Below the pieces are notes generated by a model. That model did no database searches. It saw nothing but the letters and a program-made list of their open reading frames with translations, and was not told where the DNA came from. Of a DNA stretch of 64,000 nucleotides, positions 18,939-37,876 are shown one piece after another. The stretch lies in contig NC_052154.1 of the NCBI RefSeq assembly GCF_902713615.1, forward strand, positions 65,269,652 to 65,333,651. The letters run 5' to 3'. Numbering within the stretch: the first letter of the stretch is position 1; the number at the start of each line of letters is the position of its first letter. Source of the DNA: Scyliorhinus canicula. Its lineage: Eukaryota. Position numbers and translations under genes: made by a program.

Positions 18939-19066
18939 CTTTTGCTTGTTGCAGGTAGAAAAGTACACCTTTTTCAAAATCATCCTCATTGATAAATCTG
19001 TCTCTTTTTGGTCTTCTGCTCAGAACTGGCTTTGTCACTGACTCATCAATATCAACATTAATCGAT
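18939..19066 (-). CDS. CENPT: CENP-T exon, module 2 long exon (128 nt, phase 2 to 1): SINVDIDESVTKPVLSRRPKRDRFINEDDFEKGVLFYLQQAK
   Basis: Acceptor tctgtctgttgcag, donor GTTTAG. 23/42 aa identical to 26317-26444 by hand count. Confidence 0.85.
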
Positions 19067-19584
19067 CTGCAACAGACAGAATACTATTAATGCATTTTCC
19101 ACAGCTATCATAAATGGCCTTTAATGTTCTACTGTCCAAATATACACTTACATGAGACTAGGAAAGTCTATTCAACTTTTCTTCACACCTTAACTGAAAT
19201 CCTAGACGCATCACCTGGAAGACCAGTTGTAAGGCAGCGAAACTGACCATCTGAACCATAGTCAGTTGCAAGAATAACATTCACTGCCAGAGCTACCAGG
19301 CATTGACAATTAATATTCCAGCATACCAAATATATTGTACAGTTAAATTGTAATTAAATCACATCCAGAATACTCTACAGATCTGGCAAAGATTATTCAC
19401 CAGACTGAGACAATATCACCTATCAGAAAAGGGTGGACCTCTTTTCTCTATAAAAAAGGCCGAGGGGTGACCCAACAGAGAACTTTAAAACTACAAAGGG
19501 GTTTGATGAGTTGAAGTAAAGATGTTTCTACTTGATATGGAGACCACAATTAGTCTGAAAATGTCCATGAAAATAAGATATAAT

Positions 19585-20005
19585 TAGAACATACAGTGTA
19601 GAAGGAGGCCATTCGGCCCATCGAGTTGCACCAACCCACTTTAGCCCTCACTTCCACCCTATCCTTGGTCACAGGGATAGGATGGAGGTGTGGGGCGCTG
19701 TTTCCAGGGGCTGGTGCAGACTTGATGGGCTGAATGGCCTCCATCTGCACTGTACATTCTATGATCCCCGTAACTCAATAACCCCATCTAACCTTTTCTG
19801 GACATTAAGGGCAATTTAGCATGGCCAATCCACCTAACCTTCACGTCTTTGAACTGTGGGAGGAAACCGGAGCACCCGGAGGAAACCCACGCACACACGG
19901 GGAGAACGTGCAGACTCCGCACAGACAGTGACCCAGCGGGGAACCGAACATGGGACCCTGGTGCTGTGAAGCCACAGTGCTAACCATTGTGCGACCGTGC
20001 TGCCC
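19585..20005 (-). mobile_element. HE1-like V-SINE, long form with CR1/HER1-type tail; an opposite-strand tail piece is embedded at ~19670-19765
   Basis: gggcagcacggtcgcac head, V-domain, gaatggcctccttctacactgt tail. Confidence 0.88.
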
Positions 20006-20394
20006 ACTAGTTGCCCAGAACTTCAATATTGTGTGAGAGACATTTCAAAGCTTTTAGTCTTCTGCTCATCAGGAAACTTTGCAAGAATACCAGAATAAGG
20101 GGAAAACACTGATTGGTAGAGGTGGTGGAGAATGCACCAGCTGATGGTGACTGACAGTTTATTGCAAAGTATCATTTGAAATTTAAGCCAGACAGCTTGA
20201 CCCTGACTGATCAAGGAAATGCCTTGGGGAATTATTCAGGAAATGGTGGTTATTAATTTTGTTTAGTTGAAACAGGTAGGATATGCCCAAATTCTACCTG
20301 TGGGTTGGTGCAGACTCGATGGGCCAAATGGCCTCCTTCTACACTCTATGTTCTGTGTTCTAACTATATCTTATGTGTGCACATTCTAACAGAG

Positions 20395-20690
20395 GGCACC
20401 ATCTCAGATTAAAGGGGTGATCCTTTAAAACAGATGAGGAGGAATTATTTTCAGCCAGAGGGTGGTGAATCTGTGGAACTCTTTGCCGCAGAAGGCTGTG
20501 GCTGTGGAGGCCAATTCACTGAGTGTCTTTAAGGCAGAGATAGATAGGTTCTTGATTAATAAGGGGATCAGGAGTTATGGGGAAAAGGCAGGAGAACAGG
20601 GATGAGAAAATATCAGCCATGATTGATTGGCGGAGCAGACTCGATGAGCCAAGTGACCTAATTCTGCTCCTATGTCTTATGGTCTTACAT
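20395..20690 (+). mobile_element. CR1/HER1 LINE 3' end
   Basis: FSQRVVNLWNSLP-type coding end plus hairpin and microsatellite tail. Confidence 0.85.
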
Positions 20691-20959
20691 GTTCTTTCTG
20701 CTTGGAAAGAACAGTGCATTGTGTATGTAGCTTCCAGTATATGGCAAATACGCCACACTGTAAGCCTGACTGACAATTTTAGCCTACTTGAGTCAGAGGG
20801 GCGCGATTCTCCAGAAAGATTTCTAAGTGTGGTAGTGAGCGGGAACTGTCGCCGGCTTGCTGCCTCTCGGCCTGGCAAGACGTCAACGCAATACAACGTT
20901 AATTGTCCACACAAGGTCCCACTGGTATCACGCCACAAATGAAGGCGCCAGAACAACGC

Positions 20960-23455
20960 TCACTTGAACTTCCCTCTGACCACTGTCTTAAGCAAATCCC
21001 ATAGTGCGGAGGCCGAAACCTCACCTGTGTCGTTCAACTCCACAGAAGCTCGAATGGCAGTCCTCACCCGCTCGCACACCTCCTCATCTGCTAACAGCCC
21101 CACATCCAATCTCCACCGCGGGTGCTGAGCCCCTGCTGGGTCCACTTGCACGTCCATCCAATGCGGCATGTGGTCAGAGACCACAACCGTTGAGTACCCA
21201 GTTGACCATCCCTGCCAGCAGAGCCTTATCCACCATGAAGTAATCAATCCGTACTTCGCCCTTGGTCTCCCAAACCTTCACGGATCCACTCGCTCCATAA
21301 ATCCCTTTAGCTACTCCACCACCAGCATCACCCTCCCTGATGACGGACTCGACTGATTCAATCCCGGCTCAATAACAGTATTAAAATCCACCCACCCCCA
21401 TCATCATCAACCAATGCGAAACTCACCCCCCCACCCTTCCAGTCTGCTACTGTATTCCCCAAATCAAACTTTTTCCGCTTATTTATCAGCACCACTACTC
21501 CCCGCGTCTTCTTCATATCCAACCACGAGTGAAAATCTGCCCTATCCACCCTTTCCTTAGTCTAGTCTGGTCCCCAATCTTCAAATGCATGTCCTGTAGA
21601 AATGCCACATTCGCCTTTAAGCTCCTCAGGTGTGCGACAGCTTGACCGGCCCATTCAGCCCTCTCACATTCCACGTGAAGAACCTGGTCACTCCCTTCCC
21701 CTGCCAATCAACCATAACCCTTTTGGGCCAGCCTCTGGCTCGCGACCCGCAACTCGCCAGGCACACCAACCGCCCGATCCCCATCAGCAGTTACCCCCTC
21801 TAAACTAAACAATCCCAACAATTACAAGGGGACATAAATTTAAGGTGAATGGTGGAAGATATAGGGGGGATGTCAGAGGTAGGTTCTTTACCCAGAGAGT
21901 AGTGGGGGCATGGAATGCACTGCCTGTGCAAGTAGTTGAGTCGGAAACATGAGGGACCTTCAAGCGTACATGGGTAGATGGGTACATGGATTACGGTAGA
22001 ATGATGGGGTGTAGATTAATTTGTTCTTAATCTAGGACAAAAGTTCGGCACAACATCGTGGGCCAAAGGGCCTGTTCTGTGCTGTATTTTTCTATGTTCT
22101 AAACCTCTAACCACCTGCTCATCCCCCACTGTGCTCCCGTGAATTAGTTCACCCAGCTAGCCTGACAACCCCCGCGCATGGCACCAAGCAGCCTACTCCC
22201 CACTGATTCTCCTACCCCCACCCCCGCTAGCACACTTCCATTGTGCAAACAACAATAACAATCAAAAGAAAATAAAAACGGTGCACTCACCCACCACAGT
22301 CCTCCGGCTTCCCATCAAAGAACCCCGTAAAAAAGCTAAACAGTCCCTGAGAGATAAGGGGTTCTCCCCTGTCCATCACTCAAAGAACACAAAACAATAC
22401 AACAAAAAGAGGGGCAGGGAGAAGCAACACCACCTCACACTTCCTCCAAAGTTCAATGGACTCCCTCTCCTGCCAGTTCATTATCCCTCAAAATTTCTTG
22501 CCTCCTCCGGCGTTCCAAAATAATGCTTGCGGACGTTGTAGGACACTCAAAGGCAGGCCAGATACAGCATCCCGAACTTCAACGCCTCCTTAAAGAGGCC
22601 AGTCATCACCCGGTTGAATCTGGCCCTCCTCTTTGCCAGTTCCGCGCCCAGGTCCTGATAGACCCAGAGCTTGATACCTTTCCAGGTACCTCTCCTCACC
22701 TGACTGGCCCACTGCACGATCTTCTCTTTATCCAAAAACCGGTGTAGCCTCACTACCATCGCCCTCGGCGGCTCATTCGCTTGCGGCCTCCTCATCAATG
22801 CCCTATGCACCCTCCATGGGCCGGTCGAAAGCTCCCTCCCCCAATAGCTGTTCAAACATTTTGGCCACTAAAGAGCTCCCTTGATGCCCTCCGGCATCCC
22901 CACTATTCTCAAATTCTGCCTCCGGAAACACTTTTTCCTTGAGCTGCTTCTGGGTATCCCTCACCTTCCCAATTTTGGTTGCCAATGAGGGAAGCTGCTC
23001 CTTGCTCCTCGTGCTCCCCCATCGCCTCCTCCACCTCTGGATCACCTGGCCCTGAGCCTCAGCTCCACACGGTCGATCCCCGCTTTCAGCAGGTCTACCA
23101 CACTCACCAGGTCCTCCAGAGCCTCCCTCCTCTGTTGGCAGAACCTTTCCTTCAGAACGTCCACCAACTGCTCCATCGACCATTGGGCTGGTAGGGCCGA
23201 TCCCTTACTCTGCCATCTTTCCCTGAGTCACACAAAGAGTTTCTTGCTCTTGCAGCTCCTTCCTTTTAGACCCACTTCTGGTCCACGGATCCATCCACCG
23301 ACCTCACCAGTGGAGTGTAACTTTCCTCCACCACCTCTGCACCTCTTTTCTCCAAAACATCCACCCGACAAGCAGGGAAATGGACCAACAAAGTCCGCCT
23401 CGAGCAGGAGGTGCCAAATGTGCGACGACTAACTCCATTGCCGCCACCGGACGCC
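20960..23455 (-). mobile_element. Degenerate L1 5' half (5'UTR, ORF1, endonuclease); CR1 3' fragment (+) inserted at ~21830-22100
   Basis: ORF1 motifs HRAL...PRAMVVRLHRF...YQDLGAELAKRRA; endonuclease motifs AFLQ..HL, SDH.PH, WRLDVGLL. Confidence 0.87.
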
Positions 23456-23679
23456 CGCCCGGTCTGTTGCACTTTAAGCTTGGCACTCACCCACGTATGC
23501 ACGCCTATAGAAGGGACATCGCTTGTTTGTTCCCTGCGTGACACATTCCTGATTACTGCACAGCCACACCCAAGAGGGAAATTGCTGGTATAAATGGTTT
23601 GGCTTTTCAATGGGAAGTGTATTCACTGACTGAGTCTTTTACAAACCCTACAGCTGTCAGAAATTTGTCATTGTTTGGA

Positions 23680-23885
23680 ATTTTAAAAAAATTAATTAGA
23701 GTACCCAATTATTTTTTTCTAATTAAGGGGCAATTTAGCATGGCCAATCCACCTACGCAGCACATCTTTGTGGGTTGTGGGGGTGGGACCCATGCAGATA
23801 CCACACGGACAGTGACCTGGGGCCGGAATCAAACCCCGGTCCTCGGCGCCGTGAGGCAGCAATGCTAACCACTGAGCCGCCCCTC
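23680..23885 (-). mobile_element. HE1-like V-SINE (internally deleted)
   Basis: Matches the head and tail of the other copies. Confidence 0.8.
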
Positions 23886-23949
23886 AGTTGGAATTTTCTC
23901 TGCTGTTGCACCTCCAGGGGATGATGCAAAGGTGGAGGATTTGGATTCT

Positions 23950-24045
23950 TAAACAAAAACAGAAAATGCCGGACAATTTTCAACAGGTCTGACAGCATCT
24001 GTGGAGAGAGAAGGGAGCAAATTTTTCGAGTCTGGGTGAATCTTT
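23950..24045 (-). mobile_element. Probable Penelope-like terminal fragment
   Basis: aaacagaaaatgccggaca...aggtctgacagcatctgtggagagag resembles a PLE terminus common in sharks (from recall only). Confidence 0.45.
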
Positions 24046-24829
24046 GGATTCTTGTTTATTTAAGACACCAAAAATTGGCTTCAGTGCCTCTGGCTAAGAA
24101 GAGTACATTGGGAGAGTGCCAGTGACCAATTGCTACACAGTGATTGTTATACATTTGTGCAAATAGAAAGAGGAAAGGAATAGATTCATTTATGATGCCA
24201 CACCATCAAATAACATCAAACACTCATTATCTAGGCTTACACAGGAAGCTTGGTCACCTTGTTGTACTCCTGCATGTGCCATTGCTTTCAGAAGGGAGAA
24301 AAGGGAAAGAAAATTGAGAGATTGGGAAAATGATACAAGGTTCTCTCCAAGATAAGCAGGTGCATCATCACACATCTTGCATTAATTGTAAACATGCATA
24401 ACCACAGTGTTGTCCTAAACAGTCCGCGCAAACAGAAATGACAAGAAATGTTAAAATTATACTTATTTTTGTTTAGTTCTAACTTCAGCCACGTAGAGCT
24501 TTTAAAAAGTGCTAATTATCCAAGATCATATCCACATAGGAAAATTATAATCAATTCAGGACAGTATCAATCCAACACCAGCATTTACCCTGTCAACTTT
24601 ATTGCTCCCGCCCCCACCTAAAGATAAAATAAATCTTGCAATTACTGTAAAAATGCTTGATTATGAATGGCCTGTAACATGTGGTCTACAAACAAGCCCA
24701 CTGCATCAGGCCGAGTTCAAAGGAAGTCTCAAAATTACAGAAATGGCAACATTCGCAGATATCAAATAATTTCTGCTTTTTGCATCATCTAAATCACTGA
24801 TGTTTGGTTTTCACACAAAAATGGATAAT

Positions 24830-25057
24830 TGAGGGCAATAAGGTGGTGCAGTGGTTAGCACTGCTGCCTCAAGGCGCCAAGGACCTGTGTTCGATCCTGG
24901 CCCTGGGTCACTGTCTGTATGGAGTTTGCACATTCTCTCCGTGTCTGTGTGGGTCTTATCCCCACAACCAATGTGGAGGGTAAGTGGATTGATCATGATA
25001 AATTGCTCCTTAATTGGAAAAAAGAATTGGGTACTCTAAATTTATATTAAAAAAAAG
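24830..25057 (+). mobile_element. HE1-like V-SINE
   Basis: Head, V-domain and A tail; TSD aaaaatggataat. Confidence 0.9.
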
Positions 25058-25185
25058 AAAAATGGATAATCATGGAACCAGATTTCCAAATCATCAATAA
25101 TTATAGATATATAATAAACCATATAATGAACTGAATTTGACTTTTCAACATTAAAAAAGAGCATTCATTGTTTGTTTGTTATTAC

Positions 25186-25258
25186 CCAACTATTCGAGAA
25201 ATATCTGTCAGGCCTGAAGTCTTTTCAAACGGTCCAGATCTTTCAATTTCTTCAGGTT
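25186..25258 (-). CDS. CENPT: CENP-T exon, module 2 short exon (73 nt, phase 1 to 2): EPEEIERSGPFEKTSGLTDISRIVG
   Basis: Acceptor ttgttttttgtaaag, donor GTAATA. Paralogous to 30518-30590. Confidence 0.8.
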
Positions 25259-25469
25259 CTTTACAAAAAACAAAAATATACTTTAGCAGAGAAGCAACTG
25301 AACATTGGGACACTTATGTGATTTAACAATTTTGTTCCCTAATCGTTTATACATATTGTACATTCGACTTTCCAGAGATATTTCAAACATGATGAACTTC
25401 CTTTGAGCAAATATAACTATATTGTGTTGAGTAGCATAAACCAGAAAAAACAAAATAGATACAAGAGAT

Positions 25470-26050
25470 GTAACACCTGTATCAATGCAGTCTACTGCTC
25501 TACATTGGGGAAACCAAAGGAAGACTGGTAATCGTTTTGAGGAACATCTCTATTCAGTCTGCAAGCATAGCCCTGAGCTTAGTCAGCTATCGTTTTAATA
25601 CTCCATCTTGCTCCGACTCTGACCTTTATGTCCTTGACCTTCTACAATGTTCCAAAGAAGCTGAATTCAAGTTCAAAGAGAAAAGTTTCACCTTTTGAGT
25701 GGGCATTTTACAGCCTCTGAACTCAAAACCGAGTTCAACGATTTCAGATTATAACCTCTGTCCTCATTTTCTTTCCTTTTTCTTTGCTGGTTTCTTGTTT
25801 CTCTTTTGTTCCTTTCTCTTTGCTTTCAGGTGGCAGATCATGATCACACCTTTGGTTTTACTTGTCCCATTACTGCCCTTTTGCCTTGCACCATGAACCT
25901 TTTTTGTCATGTCATCTCTCATTTCTTCCACCCTATCACAGATCTTCTCTTGTTCTTTTTCTCGCTCTCTACCTTTTCACTTGCTCAAAACATATTACAT
26001 TTCTATCTTCTCCTAATTCAGGTGAAAGATCACAGAAAGCATCAACTGTT
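25470..26050 (+). mobile_element. Penelope-like element 3' fragment (GIY-YIG endonuclease and 3'UTR)
   Basis: LLYIGETKGRL, then a frameshift, then RFEEHL: the YIGET..R...RF.EH signature of PLE GIY-YIG domains. Confidence 0.75.
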
Positions 26051-26316
26051 TTATTTGTTATATAGTTTATAATTATACTATCTTCACTTATCTGCAATTT
26101 ACAAATATATGTGCGGCAAAAACTGTGCATTGCTTTATACTGGATGCCTTTCCAATTAACATCTACATTACCTTGCAATATGATAACGATTCATTCCTGA
26201 AATATAAAGAGGTAAAACCAAAACTGGGTGACAAGTCACCCCAGGCCATTCATGCTTTAATGTAAAGTAATATTGGTTATCAAACTATAGATGTCCAAAA
26301 ATTAACAATTTTATAC

Positions 26317-26444
26317 CTTTTTCTTGCTCCAGATAATTGAGCATTCCCTCTTCAAAGTCATCCTCATTTATAACTTTGCGTTTTAATGGTCTTCTACAAA
26401 GAATTGGTTTTGTTGTGGACTCTTCAAATTCAGGATTAACAAAA
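26317..26444 (-). CDS. CENPT: CENP-T exon, module 1 long exon (128 nt, phase 2 to 1): FVNPEFEESTTKPILCRRPLKRKVINEDDFEEGMLNYLEQEK
   Basis: Acceptor tatttatttcag, donor GTATAA. Resembles human RPGLARRPPARRAVDVGAFLRDL. Confidence 0.85.
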
Positions 26445-27389
26445 CTGAAATAAATATACAATCATATGGACCATATTATATCCTCTGTTTGAAACACCAT
26501 TACATTTTCACCTTCAATTCAGTATGTATTATAATCGGTGTCATACACTTTTCTAATTGCAACTTCAAGTGCATTCTGAACTTAGCTGAGTGAGCCAGGA
26601 ATTAACAAAGGAACAAGCAAAATTATCAGGTCCATTAACATCCTCACAGTCAGCCAGTGTTACCATGTACACCACTGACTCATTCTCTAACTATGCAATT
26701 TCCTGAGCACAAAAGCACAGAAACAAAACTATGGCCATTTCAGGAAAAACGCTGGTTTAAGTTACTCTCCTGTGCCTCAAGACAATTAAGCAAAACAACA
26801 AGGGACTATGTTAGCCTACAATTCACTTGAAATATCTTCTTATCTCAAGAAATTACGGTCCCGTTAACAGGGCACCTGCAAATCCACATCCAACATGCTT
26901 TGGTATGTTGTTCCAAAGGGCGATAACCGAATGAAAACAAATACTTTCTGGAATCTAACCCATGTCTTTGCTGAAGGATTTTTACTTGTGCCCTCTGGTG
27001 CTAGCATCCCAATCAATATCAGCTATCCTATGTAACTGCAGTGACTCTCCCATGTCTCTCTAAAGTATATAATCCAAACTATTAAAGCCAGTCCAAAGCA
27101 ACAAACGCATGGTTATCATTCTGGATGCTCTGCTTGCACCTCCTCTAAATTCACAAATACTTTGCCTTGACAAAATCTTGGTTGCATGCCAAGAACCCAT
27201 CCCCATTTTTAATAAGAATCTTGTCCTATCTTAGCCAATCTTAGGCCATAAAGCACCCTCACCAGAACTGCAGAAGAATGAAAACCGTGTTGCTAGTACA
27301 AACCTCTCATTTCTCCCCACCCACACTATTTAGTATTCAAAATGCACTCCCAATATTGTAACAGATTTTTAAAATCTCCTATGAACTTG

Positions 27390-28740
27390 AATGAAAGACG
27401 GTGCGGTTGAAGTCACAGTGACTGGAGATAGTTGAAACACTTGATGGATTAAAATAGTGGTGGTATTAGGTTAACTGCACTGAAAAATCTTTAAGTCTCT
27501 AGGACCAGATGAGATGCACGTAAGGATACAAATGGAAGCAAGGGTGGAAATTGCAGGGGTAAGGATAAGTCCAACACTGCAGGCCAGTAGGTTTAGCTTC
27601 AGAGGTAGGCACGCTTCTAGATGTGAACATTCAGATCTAAATTAAGTCACTTGGGCAAGTTCTGGTTAATTCAGGAAAGCCAGCACAGATCTGTCACAGA
27701 TCCTTTGAGGAGCTAAAAGAGAGGGTAGTTGACGGTCATGCTATTGATGTGATGGACCTACACTTCCAGAAGACATTTGTTAAAGTGCTGCACAACAGAC
27801 TTCTGAGCAAAGAGAGCTCATGGATTAAAAAGGATAGTAGCAACACGGATACAGAATTAGCAGAGTGACAGGAAACAGAGATTGGTGGTGATTGATTGTT
27901 TTTCGAACTGGAGGAAGGTTTGTAGCAGGGTTCCCCAGATTGGTATTACGACTTCCTTTCATCTTGATCTACAGTAATGACCTAGACCAGGGGTGGGCAA
28001 ACTTTTCCGTGCAAGGGCCACATTCAGAAATTCACAATTTTAAAGGGCCGCATAGTATATTAAGTAAAATAATTACTTCACCCGGTTATGATTCTGGGCT
28101 CCTCATATAGAACATAGAACAGTACAGCACAGAACAGGCCCTTCGGCCCTCGATGTTGTGCCGAGCAATGATCACCCTACTCAAGTCAACGTATCCACCC
28201 TATACCAGTAAGTAACCCAACAGCCCCCCATTAACCTTTAAAAAAAATTTTTTTTTTAATTTTTTTATGACTTGATCTTGGTGGGCCGCATGAAGACCTT
28301 TGGCAGGCCGCATGCGGCCCGTGGGCCGTAGTTTGGCCACCCCTGACCTAGACTTTGGTGTTCAGAGCAATTTCAAAATCTGCAGATGACATAAAACTAC
28401 ACTGTGAACTGCGAGGGGCATGGTGTCAAACTTCAAACAGTCACAGACAGGTTGGTGGAATAAGTGGACAAGTGGCAGATGAAACGCAATGCGGTAGAAA
28501 AATGGATACAATTCTAAAACGAGGTGCAGGAGCAGAGCAACCCAAGGGCATACGTAAAAAATTATTGAAGGCTGTAGGACTGTTTGTGCTAGCTGTTAAA
28601 GCATATGGGATCCAGGGCTTTAAAAAGGGCATAAAATACAAAAGCGAGGTAGATATGATAAAAAGGTACAAAATACTGCTTCAGCCTCAGCTGGAATATT
28701 GCATCCAGTTCTGCGCACCAAATTTAGGAATGGTGTGACG
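27390..28740 (+). mobile_element. Degenerate CR1 RT fragment interrupted by a hAT MITE
   Basis: Remnants of DFQK.F.KV.H.RL, (F)ADD.KL and P.LEYCIQF. Confidence 0.75.
27988..28345 (+). mobile_element. hAT/Charlie-type MITE (358 bp) containing a CR1-type 3' tail
   Basis: TIRs CAGGGGTGGGCAAACT / AGTTTGGCCACCCCTG; perfect 8-bp TSD ACCTAGAC. Confidence 0.92.
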
Positions 28741-29553
28741 ACATGAAATTGCACTTAACTACTTATATTTTCCCTGCAAGACTTTTATTCTACTGTCCCA
28801 ATGCAATCATCACATGGGGTGGCATGGAGTGCATACACATTATAATACACAAGGTAAACAATGTAGAAATGAGAAGGGTTCACTCTTCAGGGGTTTCCTC
28901 AATAAGGATGTGCAGCACCATTAAAGCTATCTCTCTCTTCTCAGAAGTGTGCATAGAACGGATTACAACTATAACTGTTGTCTATCACAGTAAATATTTT
29001 ATTCCTCACTGTACTAGTAAACTCAATTGACAATTTTCATTTGAGAGTTAACCACTAAGCATCAATCTAGAATTTAACCATTATCTAATTATATTCTCAG
29101 CATGTTTACCCATTTTAAAGATTTAAAAAACAAGAAATAAAATGCTGGTATCATCAAAAATGACCATGAAGCTGTCAGATTGCCATAAAGACATAACTGT
29201 TTAACTGCCATCACTTAGAGAAAAAAATCTGCGATCCTTATCTAATCTGGTTAATAGGTGACTCCAGCCCCAACAGCCCATTGAAGTGGCGTAGCTAGGC
29301 ACCAGCTGTTCAAGAAGACAGTCCCACCACCACCTCAAGGTAACTAGAGATAGACAATCTATCCAAACTACATCCTGAGAATTAAAAGCAATACAAAGAT
29401 TACATTTAATTTAACTTCCAAATCCCAAGTCTTTGAAGCTATCTAATCATAAGCCAAATTTTTACATTAGTTAGCCTGCAATAATTAAATTGCATAATTA
29501 AGCAAAAGGGGCTGCAGGCATCAATCAAGTTCAATAATTGGGTTCCGTTATAA

Positions 29554-30026
29554 CAGGGGTGGGCAAACTACGGCCCACGGGCCGCCAAAGGTCTTTATGC
29601 GGCCCACCAAGATCAAGTCATTAAAAAAAAAATTTTTTTAACAATTTTTTTTAAAAAAAATTTTATTTTTTATTTTTTATAAGGTTAATGGGGGGGGGGG
29701 GGCTGTTTGGTTACTGGTAGGGTGGATACGTTGACTCGAGTAGGGTGATCATTGCTCGGCACAACATCGAGGGCCGAAGGGCCTGTTCTGTGCTGTACTG
29801 TTCTATGTTCTATATGAGGCGCCGAGAATCATAACCGGGTGAAGCGCCATTTTTGAAAAGTAGAGAAAAAGAGGGCTAAAGGCAGGATGCAGCCGGGGGA
29901 AGCGCTGAGGTATATGCCACACGCTAATTAGTTACAACCGGGACTATTAATTAATATACTATGCGGCCCTTTAAATTTGTGAATTTCTGAATGTGGCCCT
30001 TGCACGGAAAAGTTTGCCGACCCCTG
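29554..30026 (-). mobile_element. Second copy of the same hAT MITE (473 bp), inverted relative to the first
   Basis: Same TIRs, 8-bp TSD CGTTATAA, body is the reverse complement of 27988-28345 plus extra internal sequence. Confidence 0.92.
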
Positions 30027-30517
30027 CGTTATAACATAATGCTCTTTTAATACTCAGCTGCAGAACTAATTGCTCTATCAAAACTGGGTGGTGACACAAC
30101 ATACAGCAGAAATATGTAATTACACTAACATTGTAATGTGGGCCAACAAGTAGGTTCGGCAATATTAATGCTAGAAACTTTATTCCAATTCCACCTGGTC
30201 GTTGGATTTTTTTTCACGGAGTATTAATAAATCACACCCATAAAATGAGACATAAACCGTAAAATGGTGAAGTTCCAAGGTCAATGCAAGACTATTGTGC
30301 AAGCAACTTTTCAATATTTCCGTACCAGCCTCCCCGGACAGGCGCCAGAATGTGGCGACTAGGGGCTTTTCACAGTAACTTCACTTGAAGCCTACTCGTG
30401 ACAATAAGCGATTTTCATTTCATTTTTCAATATTTATATGGCGAGTACACCAAAAATGCCTCAAATTAACTATCAAGTAATACTAACATGAATTTGAGCT
30501 TATTATATAATTATTAC

Positions 30518-30590
30518 CCAACTATTGTGGTGACATCTGGGAGTCTCGTGCTCTTTTCATGTAGTTCCACTTGTTCATGTTCTTGAGTTT
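30518..30590 (-). CDS. CENPT: CENP-T exon, module 1 short exon (73 nt, phase 1 to 2): ETQEHEQVELHEKSTRLPDVTTIVG
   Basis: Acceptor caattcctag, donor GTAATA. Same length, phase and 3' end as the exon at 25186-25258. Confidence 0.8.
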
Positions 30591-35762: not shown

Positions 35763-35896
35763 CTGCTGAATGTTGGAGTCTTTGTTGTCTTGCCTTTTCA
35801 AACTCTGAAACACTTATCTTCTTTAGTTTGCGAACTTTACGGTCGCTGGACAACTTTTCCTCTGGGGTATCTTCTGCTGGCAAACTTAAACCAAAG
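35763..35896 (-). CDS. CENPT: CENP-T exon (134 nt, phase 2 to 1): SFGLSLPAEDTPEEKLSSDRKVRKLKKISVSEFEKARQQRLQHSA
   Basis: Parallels human GSLELQLP...RRKQRLRLSVFQQGV. Acceptor ttcactaatgacag, donor GTATGT. Confidence 0.85.
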
Positions 35897-37035: not shown

Positions 37036-37129
37036 CTGCCAGATGACAATTTTTTCGTGGGCTGAGATTTCTTTTGCATGGGCGTTTTCATTTTGGGATT
37101 CACAACCTTAACCAAGGAGGATTCCAGCT
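37036..37129 (-). CDS. CENPT: CENP-T exon (94 nt, phase 1 to 2): ELESSLVKVVNPKMKTPMQKKSQPTKKLSSG
   Basis: Acceptor tttcttaacag, donor GTATAT. QT-ELESSL parallels human LT-APESSIL. Phases fit both neighbours. Confidence 0.85.
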
Positions 37130-37734: not shown

Positions 37735-37876
37735 CAGTCTGCATGAATTTCTTCAGAAGATTTCTTGGTGTGTATTCATCTAAAGCCTCCGGCGGGATTG
37801 CTTCCACAGTTTTTGCTTTCCTTGGTGCCGAAGAATTCTTTCCAGTTGAATGAATTTTAGAAGATCCAGCAGTCTC
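37735..37876 (-). CDS. CENPT: CENP-T exon (142 nt, phase 0 to 1) with the TPRxLL motif: ...LDEYTPRNLLKKFMQT
   Basis: Resembles human CENP-T EEQTPRTLLKNILLT (CDK-site/Ndc80-binding motif). Acceptor tttctttttgggtgaag, donor GTGGGT. Confidence 0.85.

What the first reader, a model, noticed from the sequence alone, without database searches (positions are those of the whole stretch)
18939..30590. CENP-T carries a tandemly duplicated two-exon module, giving two candidate Mis12-complex docking motifs
Seen: exon pairs 30518-30590 + 26317-26444 and 25186-25258 + 18939-19066 have identical lengths (73 + 128 nt) and phases (1-2-1). The short exons share the ...ATAGTTGG|GTAATAA donor. Both pairs are stop-free and diverged (23/42 and 10/25 aa identical), with identity concentrated in TKP.L.RRP and INEDDFE.G.L.YL. 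I saw no similarity in the flanking introns, which suggests an old duplication kept by selection. Known: the human CENP-T segment RPGLARRPP...VDVGAFLRDL (about residues 200-230) recruits the Mis12 complex and is single-copy. Inference: this CENP-T could recruit two Mis12/KMN units, changing kinetochore stoichiometry.
Basis: partly seen in the sequence, partly recalled or inferred. Interest (0 to 1): 0.85.

Follow-up and report, generated by a model that had tools for sequence, protein, structure and literature searches.

The report
Shark CENP-T has two Mis12-docking modules
In this catshark, and in every cartilaginous fish checked, the kinetochore protein CENP-T carries two conserved tandem copies of the segment that docks the Mis12 complex in human and chicken, so it may anchor more microtubule-binding machinery per molecule, though binding itself was not tested.

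Summary
Four minus-strand exons (73+128 nt, twice; intron phases 1-2-1-2-1; AG/GT at every boundary) encode two paralogous 67-residue modules, 32/66 residues identical.

The gene is CENP-T. Twelve window exons give an open 955-codon reading that is 89% identical to residues 34-837 of Scyliorhinus torazame cenpt, which ends in a CENP-T histone fold.

A module profile hits human CENP-T once, at residues 178-222, the experimentally defined Mis12C-binding site. Both shark copies keep the Ser (human S201), the Arg-Arg (R209/R210) and the Phe-bearing helix at the same spacing.

The duplication is not peculiar to this species:
- It occurs in 18 other chondrichthyan species, including the chimaera, so it predates their split.
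- Both copies are about as conserved as the Ndc80C-binding motifs.
- Bowfin, reedfish, most teleosts, frogs, duck and human have one copy.
- The cassette was amplified independently in coelacanth (3), salamanders (2-3) and a pipefish (3).

This is a new variant of a known kind, of moderate to high interest.

The parts
30518..30590 (-). Exon A1 (73 nt), first half of Mis12C-docking module A (..TQEHEQVELHEKSTRLPDVTTIVG)
   Evidence: AG/GT boundaries and open frame. 92% identical to S. torazame CENP-T residues 195-219.
26317..26444 (-). Exon A2 (128 nt), core of module A: S..KPILCRRP..INEDDFEEGMLNYL (Ser, Arg-Arg, Phe helix)
   Evidence: 42/42 identical to S. torazame residues 220-261. Predicted helix at P0001 246-258. 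Chondrichthyan pair identity 0.79.
25186..25258 (-). Exon B1 (73 nt), first half of module B (PEEIERSGPFEKTSGLTDISRIVG)
   Evidence: 26/26 identical to S. torazame residues 261-286. Its first 12 nt are identical to the chimaera B1 exon.
18939..19066 (-). Exon B2 (128 nt), core of module B: S..KPVLSRRP..INEDDFEKGVLFYL
   Evidence: 95% identical to S. torazame residues 287-328. Predicted helix at P0001 313-330. Pair identity 0.75.
35763..35896 (-). Exon of 134 nt encoding 'module 0' (..DRKVRKLKKISVSEFEKARQQRLQ), a weak, probably older relative of the module's basic-plus-helix half
   Evidence: Module HMM hits it in several sharks at 12-28 bits. Predicted helix at P0001 181-195. The same 134-nt exon exists in the chimaera. 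The human counterpart, residues 152-177, is only sub-threshold.
37735..37876 (-). CENP-T exon carrying the Ndc80C-binding-type motif EYTPRNLLKKFMQT
   Evidence: Chondrichthyan pair identity 0.78 over the motif.
47894..48020 (-). CENP-T exon (about S. torazame residues 33-75)
   Evidence: tblastn; AG/GT and open frame.
37036..37129 (-). CENP-T exon (about residues 122-153)
13093..13476 (-). CENP-T exon directly after module B (EKSFPEGED...), residues 329-457
   Evidence: 91.5% identical to S. torazame; AG/GT.
5097..5237 (-). CENP-T exon (residues 457-503)
610..1962 (-). Long CENP-T exon with the acidic EDERVE-type coding repeat
301..388 (-). Last CENP-T exon inside the window (VRPIFQQSAKVFKSSPLLTTPHFLKILGSK). 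The histone-fold exons lie beyond the window start.
   Evidence: 97% identical to S. torazame residues 807-837. The GTAAGT donor was read by eye: one search tested the end at 300 and found TA there, not GT, and the end at 301 was not re-run.

Best explanation
Shown. The gene is CENP-T. A symmetric two-exon cassette, bounded by phase-1 introns with a phase-2 intron inside, encodes the whole Mis12C-binding domain. It was duplicated in tandem in the stem lineage of cartilaginous fishes. Both copies sit in frame, one after the other, in every annotated transcript model. Both have stayed about as conserved as the Ndc80C-binding motifs ever since.

Inferred. Each copy is a working Mis12C dock. The conserved Arg-Arg would contact the acidic patch of Nsl1. 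The Phe-bearing amphipathic helix would pack on Head1. The conserved Ser eight residues upstream would be the phospho-switch, equivalent to human S201 and chicken T184. Chondrichthyan CENP-T would then offer two KMN docking sites about 67 residues apart, raising the number or the dwell time of KMN complexes per CENP-T.

My odds: duplication, gene identity and selection about 0.95; both copies bind Mis12C about 0.55; two Mis12C bound at the same time about 0.35.
For: Gene identity:
- 12 exons with AG/GT give an open 955-codon reading, 712/796 aligned residues identical to S. torazame cenpt residues 34-837.
- That protein has Pfam CENP-T_C at 92.6 bits.

Homology to the known site:
- A profile of the modules hits human CENP-T (PDB 7QOO chain T) at residues 178-222, E 1.3e-10.
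- That region binds Mis12C when S201 is phosphorylated (PMC5241120).
- Its chicken equivalent, residues 161-216, needs R192/R193 and I202/F205/V209 (PMC11612794).

Features kept in both modules:
- In the window, both have Ser at -8 from the Arg-Arg, the Arg-Arg itself, and Phe at +12.
- Across chondrichthyans the Phe never varies and the Ser is Ser or Thr. The Arg-Arg is RK, KR or shifted in a few species.
- AlphaFold2 predicts an isolated helix with block-mean pLDDT about 70-80 over EDDFE..YL in both.

Age:
- Two modules occur in 18 other chondrichthyan species, including Callorhinchus.
- The B copies form a clade that includes the chimaera copy (100/99*).
- All chondrichthyan copies are separated from all bony-vertebrate copies (100/97*).

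Selection and structure:
- Mean pair identity is 0.79 for A2, 0.74 for B1 and 0.75 for B2. Flanks score 0.45-0.49, the Ndc80 motifs 0.76-0.78 and the histone fold 0.87.
- The cassette has the same two exons and the same 1-2-1 phases in the chimaera (61+125 and 73+122 nt) and in a single-copy teleost (67+149 nt).
- All isoform models seen, including 10 of Amblyraja, contain both copies.
Against: - There are no RNA reads for this species, and no binding or structural data for any chondrichthyan.
- The TP site equivalent to human T195 is Asn in both shark modules.
- The Pro at -2 of the non-canonical CDK1 site around S201 is Asp or Glu. Phospho-regulation must therefore differ, or be replaced by fixed acidic residues.
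- The residue aligned to human V219 / chicken I202 is not hydrophobic in this register.
- The chimaera copy A has RS..RR instead of RR.
- Copy B sits on a long branch (0.85 changes per site) after the duplication, which also fits a changed function.
- The two docks are directly adjacent, and whether two 20-nm Mis12C rods fit side by side is unknown.
Confidence: 0.55

Rival explanations
1. Both modules bind the same site on Mis12C, but only one complex is bound at a time. The second copy raises avidity or rebinding, or lets two differently regulated switches control one dock. Stoichiometry stays 1:1.
For: - The modules are contiguous with no spacer.
- The sequence around the phospho-Ser differs consistently between copies: EEST in A, D-E-S-V in B.
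- Human and chicken manage with one dock (PMC5241120, PMC8844409).
Against: - Human CENP-T binds two Ndc80C at motifs only 74 residues apart (T11 and T85, PMC5241120). Close spacing therefore does not by itself exclude double occupancy.
- Repeated gain of third copies in coelacanth, newt and pipefish fits a dosage effect better than a two-switch design.
Confidence: 0.25
2. One copy, more likely B, has changed function since the duplication. It would now bind another partner or act as a regulatory pseudo-site, leaving a single true Mis12C dock.
For: - There is a long branch leading to the B clade, then strong conservation.
- B-specific residues are fixed, such as VLFYLQQ against VHNYLEQ.
Against: B keeps the Ser, the Arg-Arg (RK or KR in some rays), the invariant Phe and the predicted helix, at the same spacing as A and as the human site.
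Confidence: 0.13
3. The two cassettes are used as alternative, mutually exclusive exon pairs, as many tandemly duplicated exons are. Each protein molecule would then carry only one module.
For: Each cassette is 201 nt, so skipping either one keeps the frame. There are no RNA data for this species.
Against: - Every RefSeq model retrieved in 18 species, and every isoform of Amblyraja, Narcine, Hypanus, Heptranchias and Callorhinchus, holds both modules.
- The Callorhinchus protein V9KBP6 also holds both. From my own knowledge, not checked here, that entry is transcriptome-derived.
Confidence: 0.05
4. Chance resemblance or an assembly artefact, meaning a falsely duplicated segment.
For: None found.
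Against: - The copies are only 48% identical in protein, their introns are unrelated, and there are no N runs in the window.
- The same two diverged copies occur in independent assemblies of 18 other species.
Confidence: 0.01

Closest known systems
Mis12C-binding region of human CENP-T (residues about 176-232; S201, R209/R210, V219/F222/L226) and chicken CENP-T (161-216; T184, R192/R193, I202/F205/V209)
   Same: The sequences are homologous: the module profile hits human residues 178-222 at E 1.3e-10. The order and spacing of phospho-Ser, Arg-Arg and the Phe-bearing helix are the same (PMC11612794, PMC5241120).
   Different: There is one copy in human and chicken (1:1 with Mis12C) and two in cartilaginous fishes. 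The shark copies lack the T195-type TP site and the Pro at -2 of the S201 site, and carry acidic residues there instead.
The two Ndc80C-binding motifs of human CENP-T (T11 and T85), against one in chicken
   Same: This is a precedent that the number of outer-kinetochore docking motifs on the CENP-T arm differs between vertebrates, and that two docks about 70 residues apart can be filled together (PMC5241120, PMC9252888).
   Different: Those motifs bind Spc24/Spc25 directly. Here the repeated unit is the Mis12C dock, which would bring a whole KMN unit, including Knl1C.
Engineered chicken CENP-T 2x(1-90) (Takenoshita et al. 2022, PMC8844409)
   Same: Doubling a docking domain on CENP-T is tolerated and recruits extra complexes in cells.
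   Different: It is artificial and doubles the Ndc80C-binding domain. The shark case is natural, ancient, and doubles the Mis12C-binding domain.
Recurrent amplification of MELT-type repeat modules in the kinetochore scaffold KNL1 (Tromer, Snel and Kops 2015; from my own knowledge, not checked here)
   Same: A short docking module in a disordered kinetochore protein is amplified again and again in separate lineages.
   Different: It is a different protein and partner (Bub3/Bub1). KNL1 arrays turn over quickly, whereas the chondrichthyan CENP-T pair has been stable since before the chimaera-elasmobranch split.

Membership tests
CENP-T (vertebrate centromere protein T) | C-terminal CENP-T histone fold (Pfam PF15511) | tested here: inconclusive
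   The histone-fold exons lie outside the window, beyond coordinate 1. The window's 12 exons are collinear with and 89% identical to residues 34-837 of S. torazame cenpt. That protein's residues 857-954 match PF15511 at 92.6 bits against a cut-off of 28.1. The feature is therefore met through the ortholog, not in the window itself.
CENP-T (vertebrate centromere protein T) | N-terminal Ndc80C-binding motif of the TPRxLLKxxxxT type | tested here: met
   Exon 37735-37876 encodes EYTPRNLLKKFMQT. Pair identity is 0.78 among 16 chondrichthyans.
CENP-T (vertebrate centromere protein T) | Segment homologous to the Mis12C-binding region between the Ndc80 motif and the long linker | tested here: met
   The module profile hits human CENP-T residues 178-222 at E 1.3e-10. 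Pfam CENP-T_N covers module A in Mustelus at 27.6 bits, cut-off 27.
Mis12C-binding domain of CENP-T | Arg-Arg pair that contacts the Nsl1 acidic patch (chicken R192/R193, human R209/R210) | tested here: met
   RRP is present in both window modules and in nearly all chondrichthyan copies. Exceptions are RK or KR in some rays and one sawshark, and RS..RR in chimaera copy A.
Mis12C-binding domain of CENP-T | Amphipathic helix with hydrophobic face (chicken I202/F205/V209) | tested here: inconclusive
   Phe at +12 from the second Arg is invariant, with Met/Val at +16 and Tyr-Leu at +19/+20. A helix is predicted in both modules with block-mean pLDDT about 70-80. The residue aligned to I202/V219 is Glu in this register, and contact with Head1 was not modelled.
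Mis12C-binding domain of CENP-T | Phospho-acceptor eight residues before the Arg-Arg (human S201, chicken T184) in a P-x-S-V-x-R/K context | tested here: inconclusive
   Ser is present in both modules and Lys at +3 is kept. Pro at -2 is replaced by Glu or Asp. The kinase is unknown.
Mis12C-binding domain of CENP-T | TP CDK site equivalent to human T195 | tested here: not met
   The aligned residue is Asn in both shark modules (NP in A; NV or NF in B). Bony vertebrates keep TP. PMC5241120 reports that T195 is weakly conserved and not required for binding in vitro.
Mis12C-binding domain of CENP-T | Physical binding to the Mis12 complex | not testable with these tools
   The structure tool predicts single chains only, and there is no chondrichthyan biochemistry in the literature searched.
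Mutually exclusive tandem exon duplicates | Transcripts contain one copy or the other, not both | tested here: not met
   All RefSeq models and isoforms retrieved contain both modules. Direct RNA evidence for this species was unavailable.

The most novel reading that the evidence does not exclude
The number of Mis12C docks on CENP-T is an evolvable dial of kinetochore strength. Cartilaginous fishes fixed two docks before the chimaera-elasmobranch split. One CENP-T there would carry two full KMN units plus directly bound Ndc80C. The same cassette was amplified independently to two or three copies in coelacanth, salamanders and a pipefish.
Probability: 0.3. Interest if true: 0.8.

Novelty: new variant of a known kind. 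Interest (0 to 1): 0.6.

Why it matters
Current models of the vertebrate kinetochore, built on human and chicken, fix CENP-T at one Mis12C (one KMN) plus one or two directly bound Ndc80C. Work in chicken cells shows that the number of Ndc80C per CENP-T matters for segregation (PMC8844409).

A whole vertebrate class with two strongly conserved docks is a natural experiment on that number. So are the at least three further lineages that amplified the same cassette independently. These cases allow direct tests:
- whether two KMN units can sit on one CENP-T;
- whether the dock can work without the TP and P-x-S CDK sites;
- whether changes in CENP-T valency go with changes in the CENP-C pathway or in chromosome size.

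The sequences are already in public annotation. What is new is recognising the repeat and its distribution.

Tried and rejected
- **RNA evidence.** No junction evidence exists for this species.
- **Pfam on the bare modules.** This gave only a sub-threshold AIF_C match (17-19 bits, cut-off 25.9). I rejected it as chance.
- **Short transcript-derived protein fragments** spanning the A2-B1 join: none found.
- **Solved structures.** The shark segment alone matched nothing. Only the broader module profile reached human CENP-T.
- **Genomic DNA of other species:**
  - No record for P0006, P0009 and P0082.
  - No DNA for S. torazame (gene about 102 kb), Chiloscyllium and Mobula.
  - Exon structure could therefore be compared only with the chimaera and a tarpon.
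- **dN/dS between the two modules.** It is near saturation (dS 0.96) and says little. I used cross-species protein conservation instead.
- **Exon 1** (about S. torazame residues 1-32) was not found in the window.
- **Genome size.** I considered a link with module number and dropped it. The chimaera and, from my own knowledge, the pipefish have small genomes, while large-genome frogs have one copy.
- **Two tool calls failed** on input slips.


Full report
**What is in the sequence.**
They are 30590-30518, 26444-26317, 25258-25186 and 19066-18939. They measure 73, 128, 73 and 128 nt. Spliced in order, they read open in one frame:

- Module A: ..TQEHEQVELHEKSTRLPDVTTIVG|FVNPEFEESTTKPILCRRPLKRKVINEDDFEEGMLNYLEQEK
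- Module B: PEEIERSGPFEKTSGLTDISRIVG|SINVDIDESVTKPVLSRRPKRDRFINEDDFEKGVLFYLQQAK

Intron phases are 1-2-1-2-1, so each 201-nt pair is a symmetric cassette. Both short exons end AATAGTTGG|gtaataa.

Identity is 23/42 for the long exons and 9/24 for the short ones, 32/66 overall. Shuffling reached those values at frequency 7e-05 for the short exons and never in 100,000 trials for the long exons. At the DNA level the long exons are 71% identical (E 1.6e-12), and the introns share only a 57-nt dispersed repeat.

**Which gene.**
I searched a profile of the two long-exon peptides against 1.84 billion representative proteins. It returned 12 proteins. All that were named are CENP-T. The best is Scyliorhinus torazame cenpt (XP_072374438.1, 964 aa), which contains the spliced A1-A2-B1-B2 sequence almost letter for letter.

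tblastn of that protein places twelve collinear exons in the window, from 48020 down to 301. Eleven of them tested AG/GT. The twelfth gave no GT at the end I tested (300), and I moved it to 301 by eye. The twelve exons, as tested, give a stop-free reading of 955 codons. It is identical to S. torazame at 712 of 796 aligned residues, covering its residues 34-837.

The S. torazame protein ends in a CENP-T histone fold (Pfam PF15511, 92.6 bits). The exons for that fold lie beyond the window start. The window also encodes the Ndc80C-binding-type motif EYTPRNLLKKFMQT (37876-37735). The gene is therefore CENP-T of a catshark close to S. torazame.

**What the module is.**
I aligned modules from shark, chimaera, coelacanth, salamanders, frogs, duck, bowfin and tarpon and used the alignment as a profile against all PDB chain sequences. 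It hit human CENP-T (7QOO chain T) at residues 178-222, GNADASSLTRSLNLTFATPLQPQSVQRPGLARRPPARRAVDVGAF, with E 1.3e-10. That was the only significant stretch.

This is the experimentally defined Mis12C dock:

- Peptide 184-215 binds Mis12C when S201 is phosphorylated, and the complex is 1:1 (PMC5241120).
- In chicken the equivalent 161-216 needs R192/R193 (human R209/R210) to contact an acidic patch on Nsl1.
- It also needs a helix with I202/F205/V209 (human V219/F222/L226) to contact Head1.
- T184 in chicken is the counterpart of human S201 (PMC11612794).

Both shark modules carry a Ser exactly eight residues before an Arg-Arg and a Phe twelve residues after it, followed by Met/Val and Tyr-Leu. 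AlphaFold2 on the region (17-sequence alignment) predicts a mostly disordered chain with three isolated helices. Block-mean pLDDT is about 70-80 over the EDDFE..YL stretches of A and B, and about 75 over the similar stretch of the upstream exon. Each 67-residue cassette thus corresponds to the whole 56-residue chicken domain.

There are two differences from the tetrapod site. The TP equivalent to human T195 is Asn in both shark copies. The Pro at -2 of the S201 site is Glu or Asp. The resulting D/E-x-S-hydrophobic context in copy B looks more like a Plk1-type site than a CDK1 site. That last point is my inference only.

**How old and how widespread.**
Using histone-fold regions as bait I collected CENP-T from many vertebrates. 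I counted modules with an HMM.

| Modules | Lineages |
|---|---|
| 2 strong | all 18 other chondrichthyan species: sharks of seven orders as I assign them (Carcharhiniformes, Lamniformes, Orectolobiformes, Heterodontiformes, Hexanchiformes and Pristiophoriformes are six; the sampling is summarised), skates, electric ray, stingrays, manta, and the chimaera Callorhinchus milii |
| 1 | bowfin, reedfish, about 25 teleosts, four frogs, a duck, human |
| 3 | coelacanth |
| 2, 2, 3 | Ambystoma, Pleurodeles, Lissotriton |
| 3 | the pipefish Syngnathoides |

Every isoform model retrieved keeps all of its modules.

Trees of the modules give the following (71 columns, so only the strong branches count):

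- All chondrichthyan copies fall on one side of a starred branch, against all bony-vertebrate copies (100/97*).
- The B copies form a clade that includes the chimaera's second copy (100/99*).
- The A copies have short branches and surround B.
- The coelacanth copies (99/95*) and the pipefish copies (100/99*) are each their own clade.
- The salamander upstream copies (100/97*) and downstream copies (96/87*) are two clades shared by axolotl and newts, with a further recent duplication in Lissotriton (100/94*).

So the shark pair arose once, after the split from bony vertebrates and before the chimaera-elasmobranch split. The cassette was amplified independently at least three more times.

**Mechanism of the duplication.**
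In the chimaera the cassettes are 61+125 and 73+122 nt. In the single-copy tarpon the cassette is 67+149 nt. In all three species the flanking and internal intron phases are 1-2-1 (phases computed from the exon lengths). The preceding exon is 134, 134 and 137 nt.

The two-exon symmetric cassette is therefore ancestral. A tandem genomic duplication of it gives an in-frame second domain without further change. The distance between equivalent positions of successive copies is 64-71 residues in chondrichthyans, 75 in coelacanth, 69-72 in salamanders and 60 in the pipefish.

**Selection.**
Mean pair identity among 16 chondrichthyan CENP-T proteins:

| Segment | Mean pair identity |
|---|---|
| A2 | 0.79 |
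| B1 | 0.74 |
| B2 | 0.75 |
| A1 | 0.60 |
| The two Ndc80-type motifs | 0.76 and 0.78 |
| Histone fold | 0.87 |
| Neighbouring linker | 0.45-0.49 |
| Repeat-rich linker | 0.20 |

Both copies are thus among the best-kept parts of the disordered arm. dN/dS between A and B is 0.38, but dS is near saturation.

**Reading.**
The duplication, the gene identity, the homology to the Mis12C dock and long-term purifying selection on both copies are shown. That both copies bind Mis12C is inferred from the conserved determinants. That two complexes bind at once is a further inference. Its only support is the precedent of two Ndc80C bound 74 residues apart on human CENP-T, and the repeated gain of extra copies in other lineages.

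The rivals are:

- one complex at a time, with higher avidity or dual regulation;
- a changed function for copy B, which sits on a long branch;
- alternative use of the cassettes, which all annotated isoforms argue against.

**Novelty.**
Full-text searches found no paper describing more than one Mis12C-binding region in any CENP-T. I combined CENP-T and Mis12 with duplication, shark, axolotl, and copy number plus evolution, and CENP-T alone with coelacanth. Reviews state one Mis12C site (PMC9252888, PMC11189300).

I class it as a new variant of a known kind: a known protein and a known docking domain, present in a repeated form that is fixed in a whole vertebrate class and recurrent elsewhere.

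Noticed in passing
window 35763-35896 (-): The exon just upstream of module A (..DRKVRKLKKISVSEFEKARQQRLQ) resembles the basic-plus-helix half of the module. The HMM scores it 12-28 bits in several sharks, AlphaFold2 predicts a helix, and the same 134-nt exon exists in the chimaera. Human residues 152-177 (RRKQRLRLSVFQQGVDQGL) align only below threshold. It may be an older, degenerate third copy of unknown function.
   Followed up: partly
P0010/P0024 (Latimeria), P0012 and P0074-P0076 (Ambystoma), P0077 (Pleurodeles), P0078 (Lissotriton), P0082 (Syngnathoides): The same Mis12C-docking cassette was amplified independently: three copies in coelacanth, two in axolotl and Pleurodeles, three in Lissotriton, and three in a pipefish. 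Each lineage's copies cluster together on the tree.
   Followed up: partly
window 26317-26444 and 18939-19066 (-); alignment A3: In cartilaginous fishes the TP site equivalent to human T195 is Asn, and the Pro at -2 of the S201 site is Asp or Glu. Bony vertebrates keep TP and mostly P-E-S. The phospho-control of the dock has probably changed.
   Followed up: partly
window 610-1962 (-): This 1353-nt CENP-T exon consists largely of an acidic EDERVE-type coding repeat. It is longer here than in S. torazame and very poorly conserved among chondrichthyans (pair identity 0.20). Skates and rays have GLDG-type repeats at the same place.
   Followed up: no
window 29756-29812, 28108-28164, 22045-22101: A 57-nt element (93% identical) occurs twice in inverted orientation in the A1-A2 intron and once in the B1-B2 intron. 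It is probably transposon ends, and it is the only similarity between the introns of the two cassettes.
   Followed up: no
P0031, P0002, P0008 (public annotation): Hemiscyllium ocellatum CENP-T is named 'ribosomal L1 domain-containing protein CG13096' in RefSeq. The Carcharodon model is cut short (584 aa, no histone fold). The Pristis model starts inside module B.
   Followed up: no
window, above 48020: The first coding exon (about S. torazame residues 1-32, with the conserved MTMRTLIKGMI motif) was not found in the window. The stretch 48.3-59.9 kb upstream is filled with a minisatellite and LINE insertions. The S. torazame gene spans about 102 kb.
   Followed up: partly
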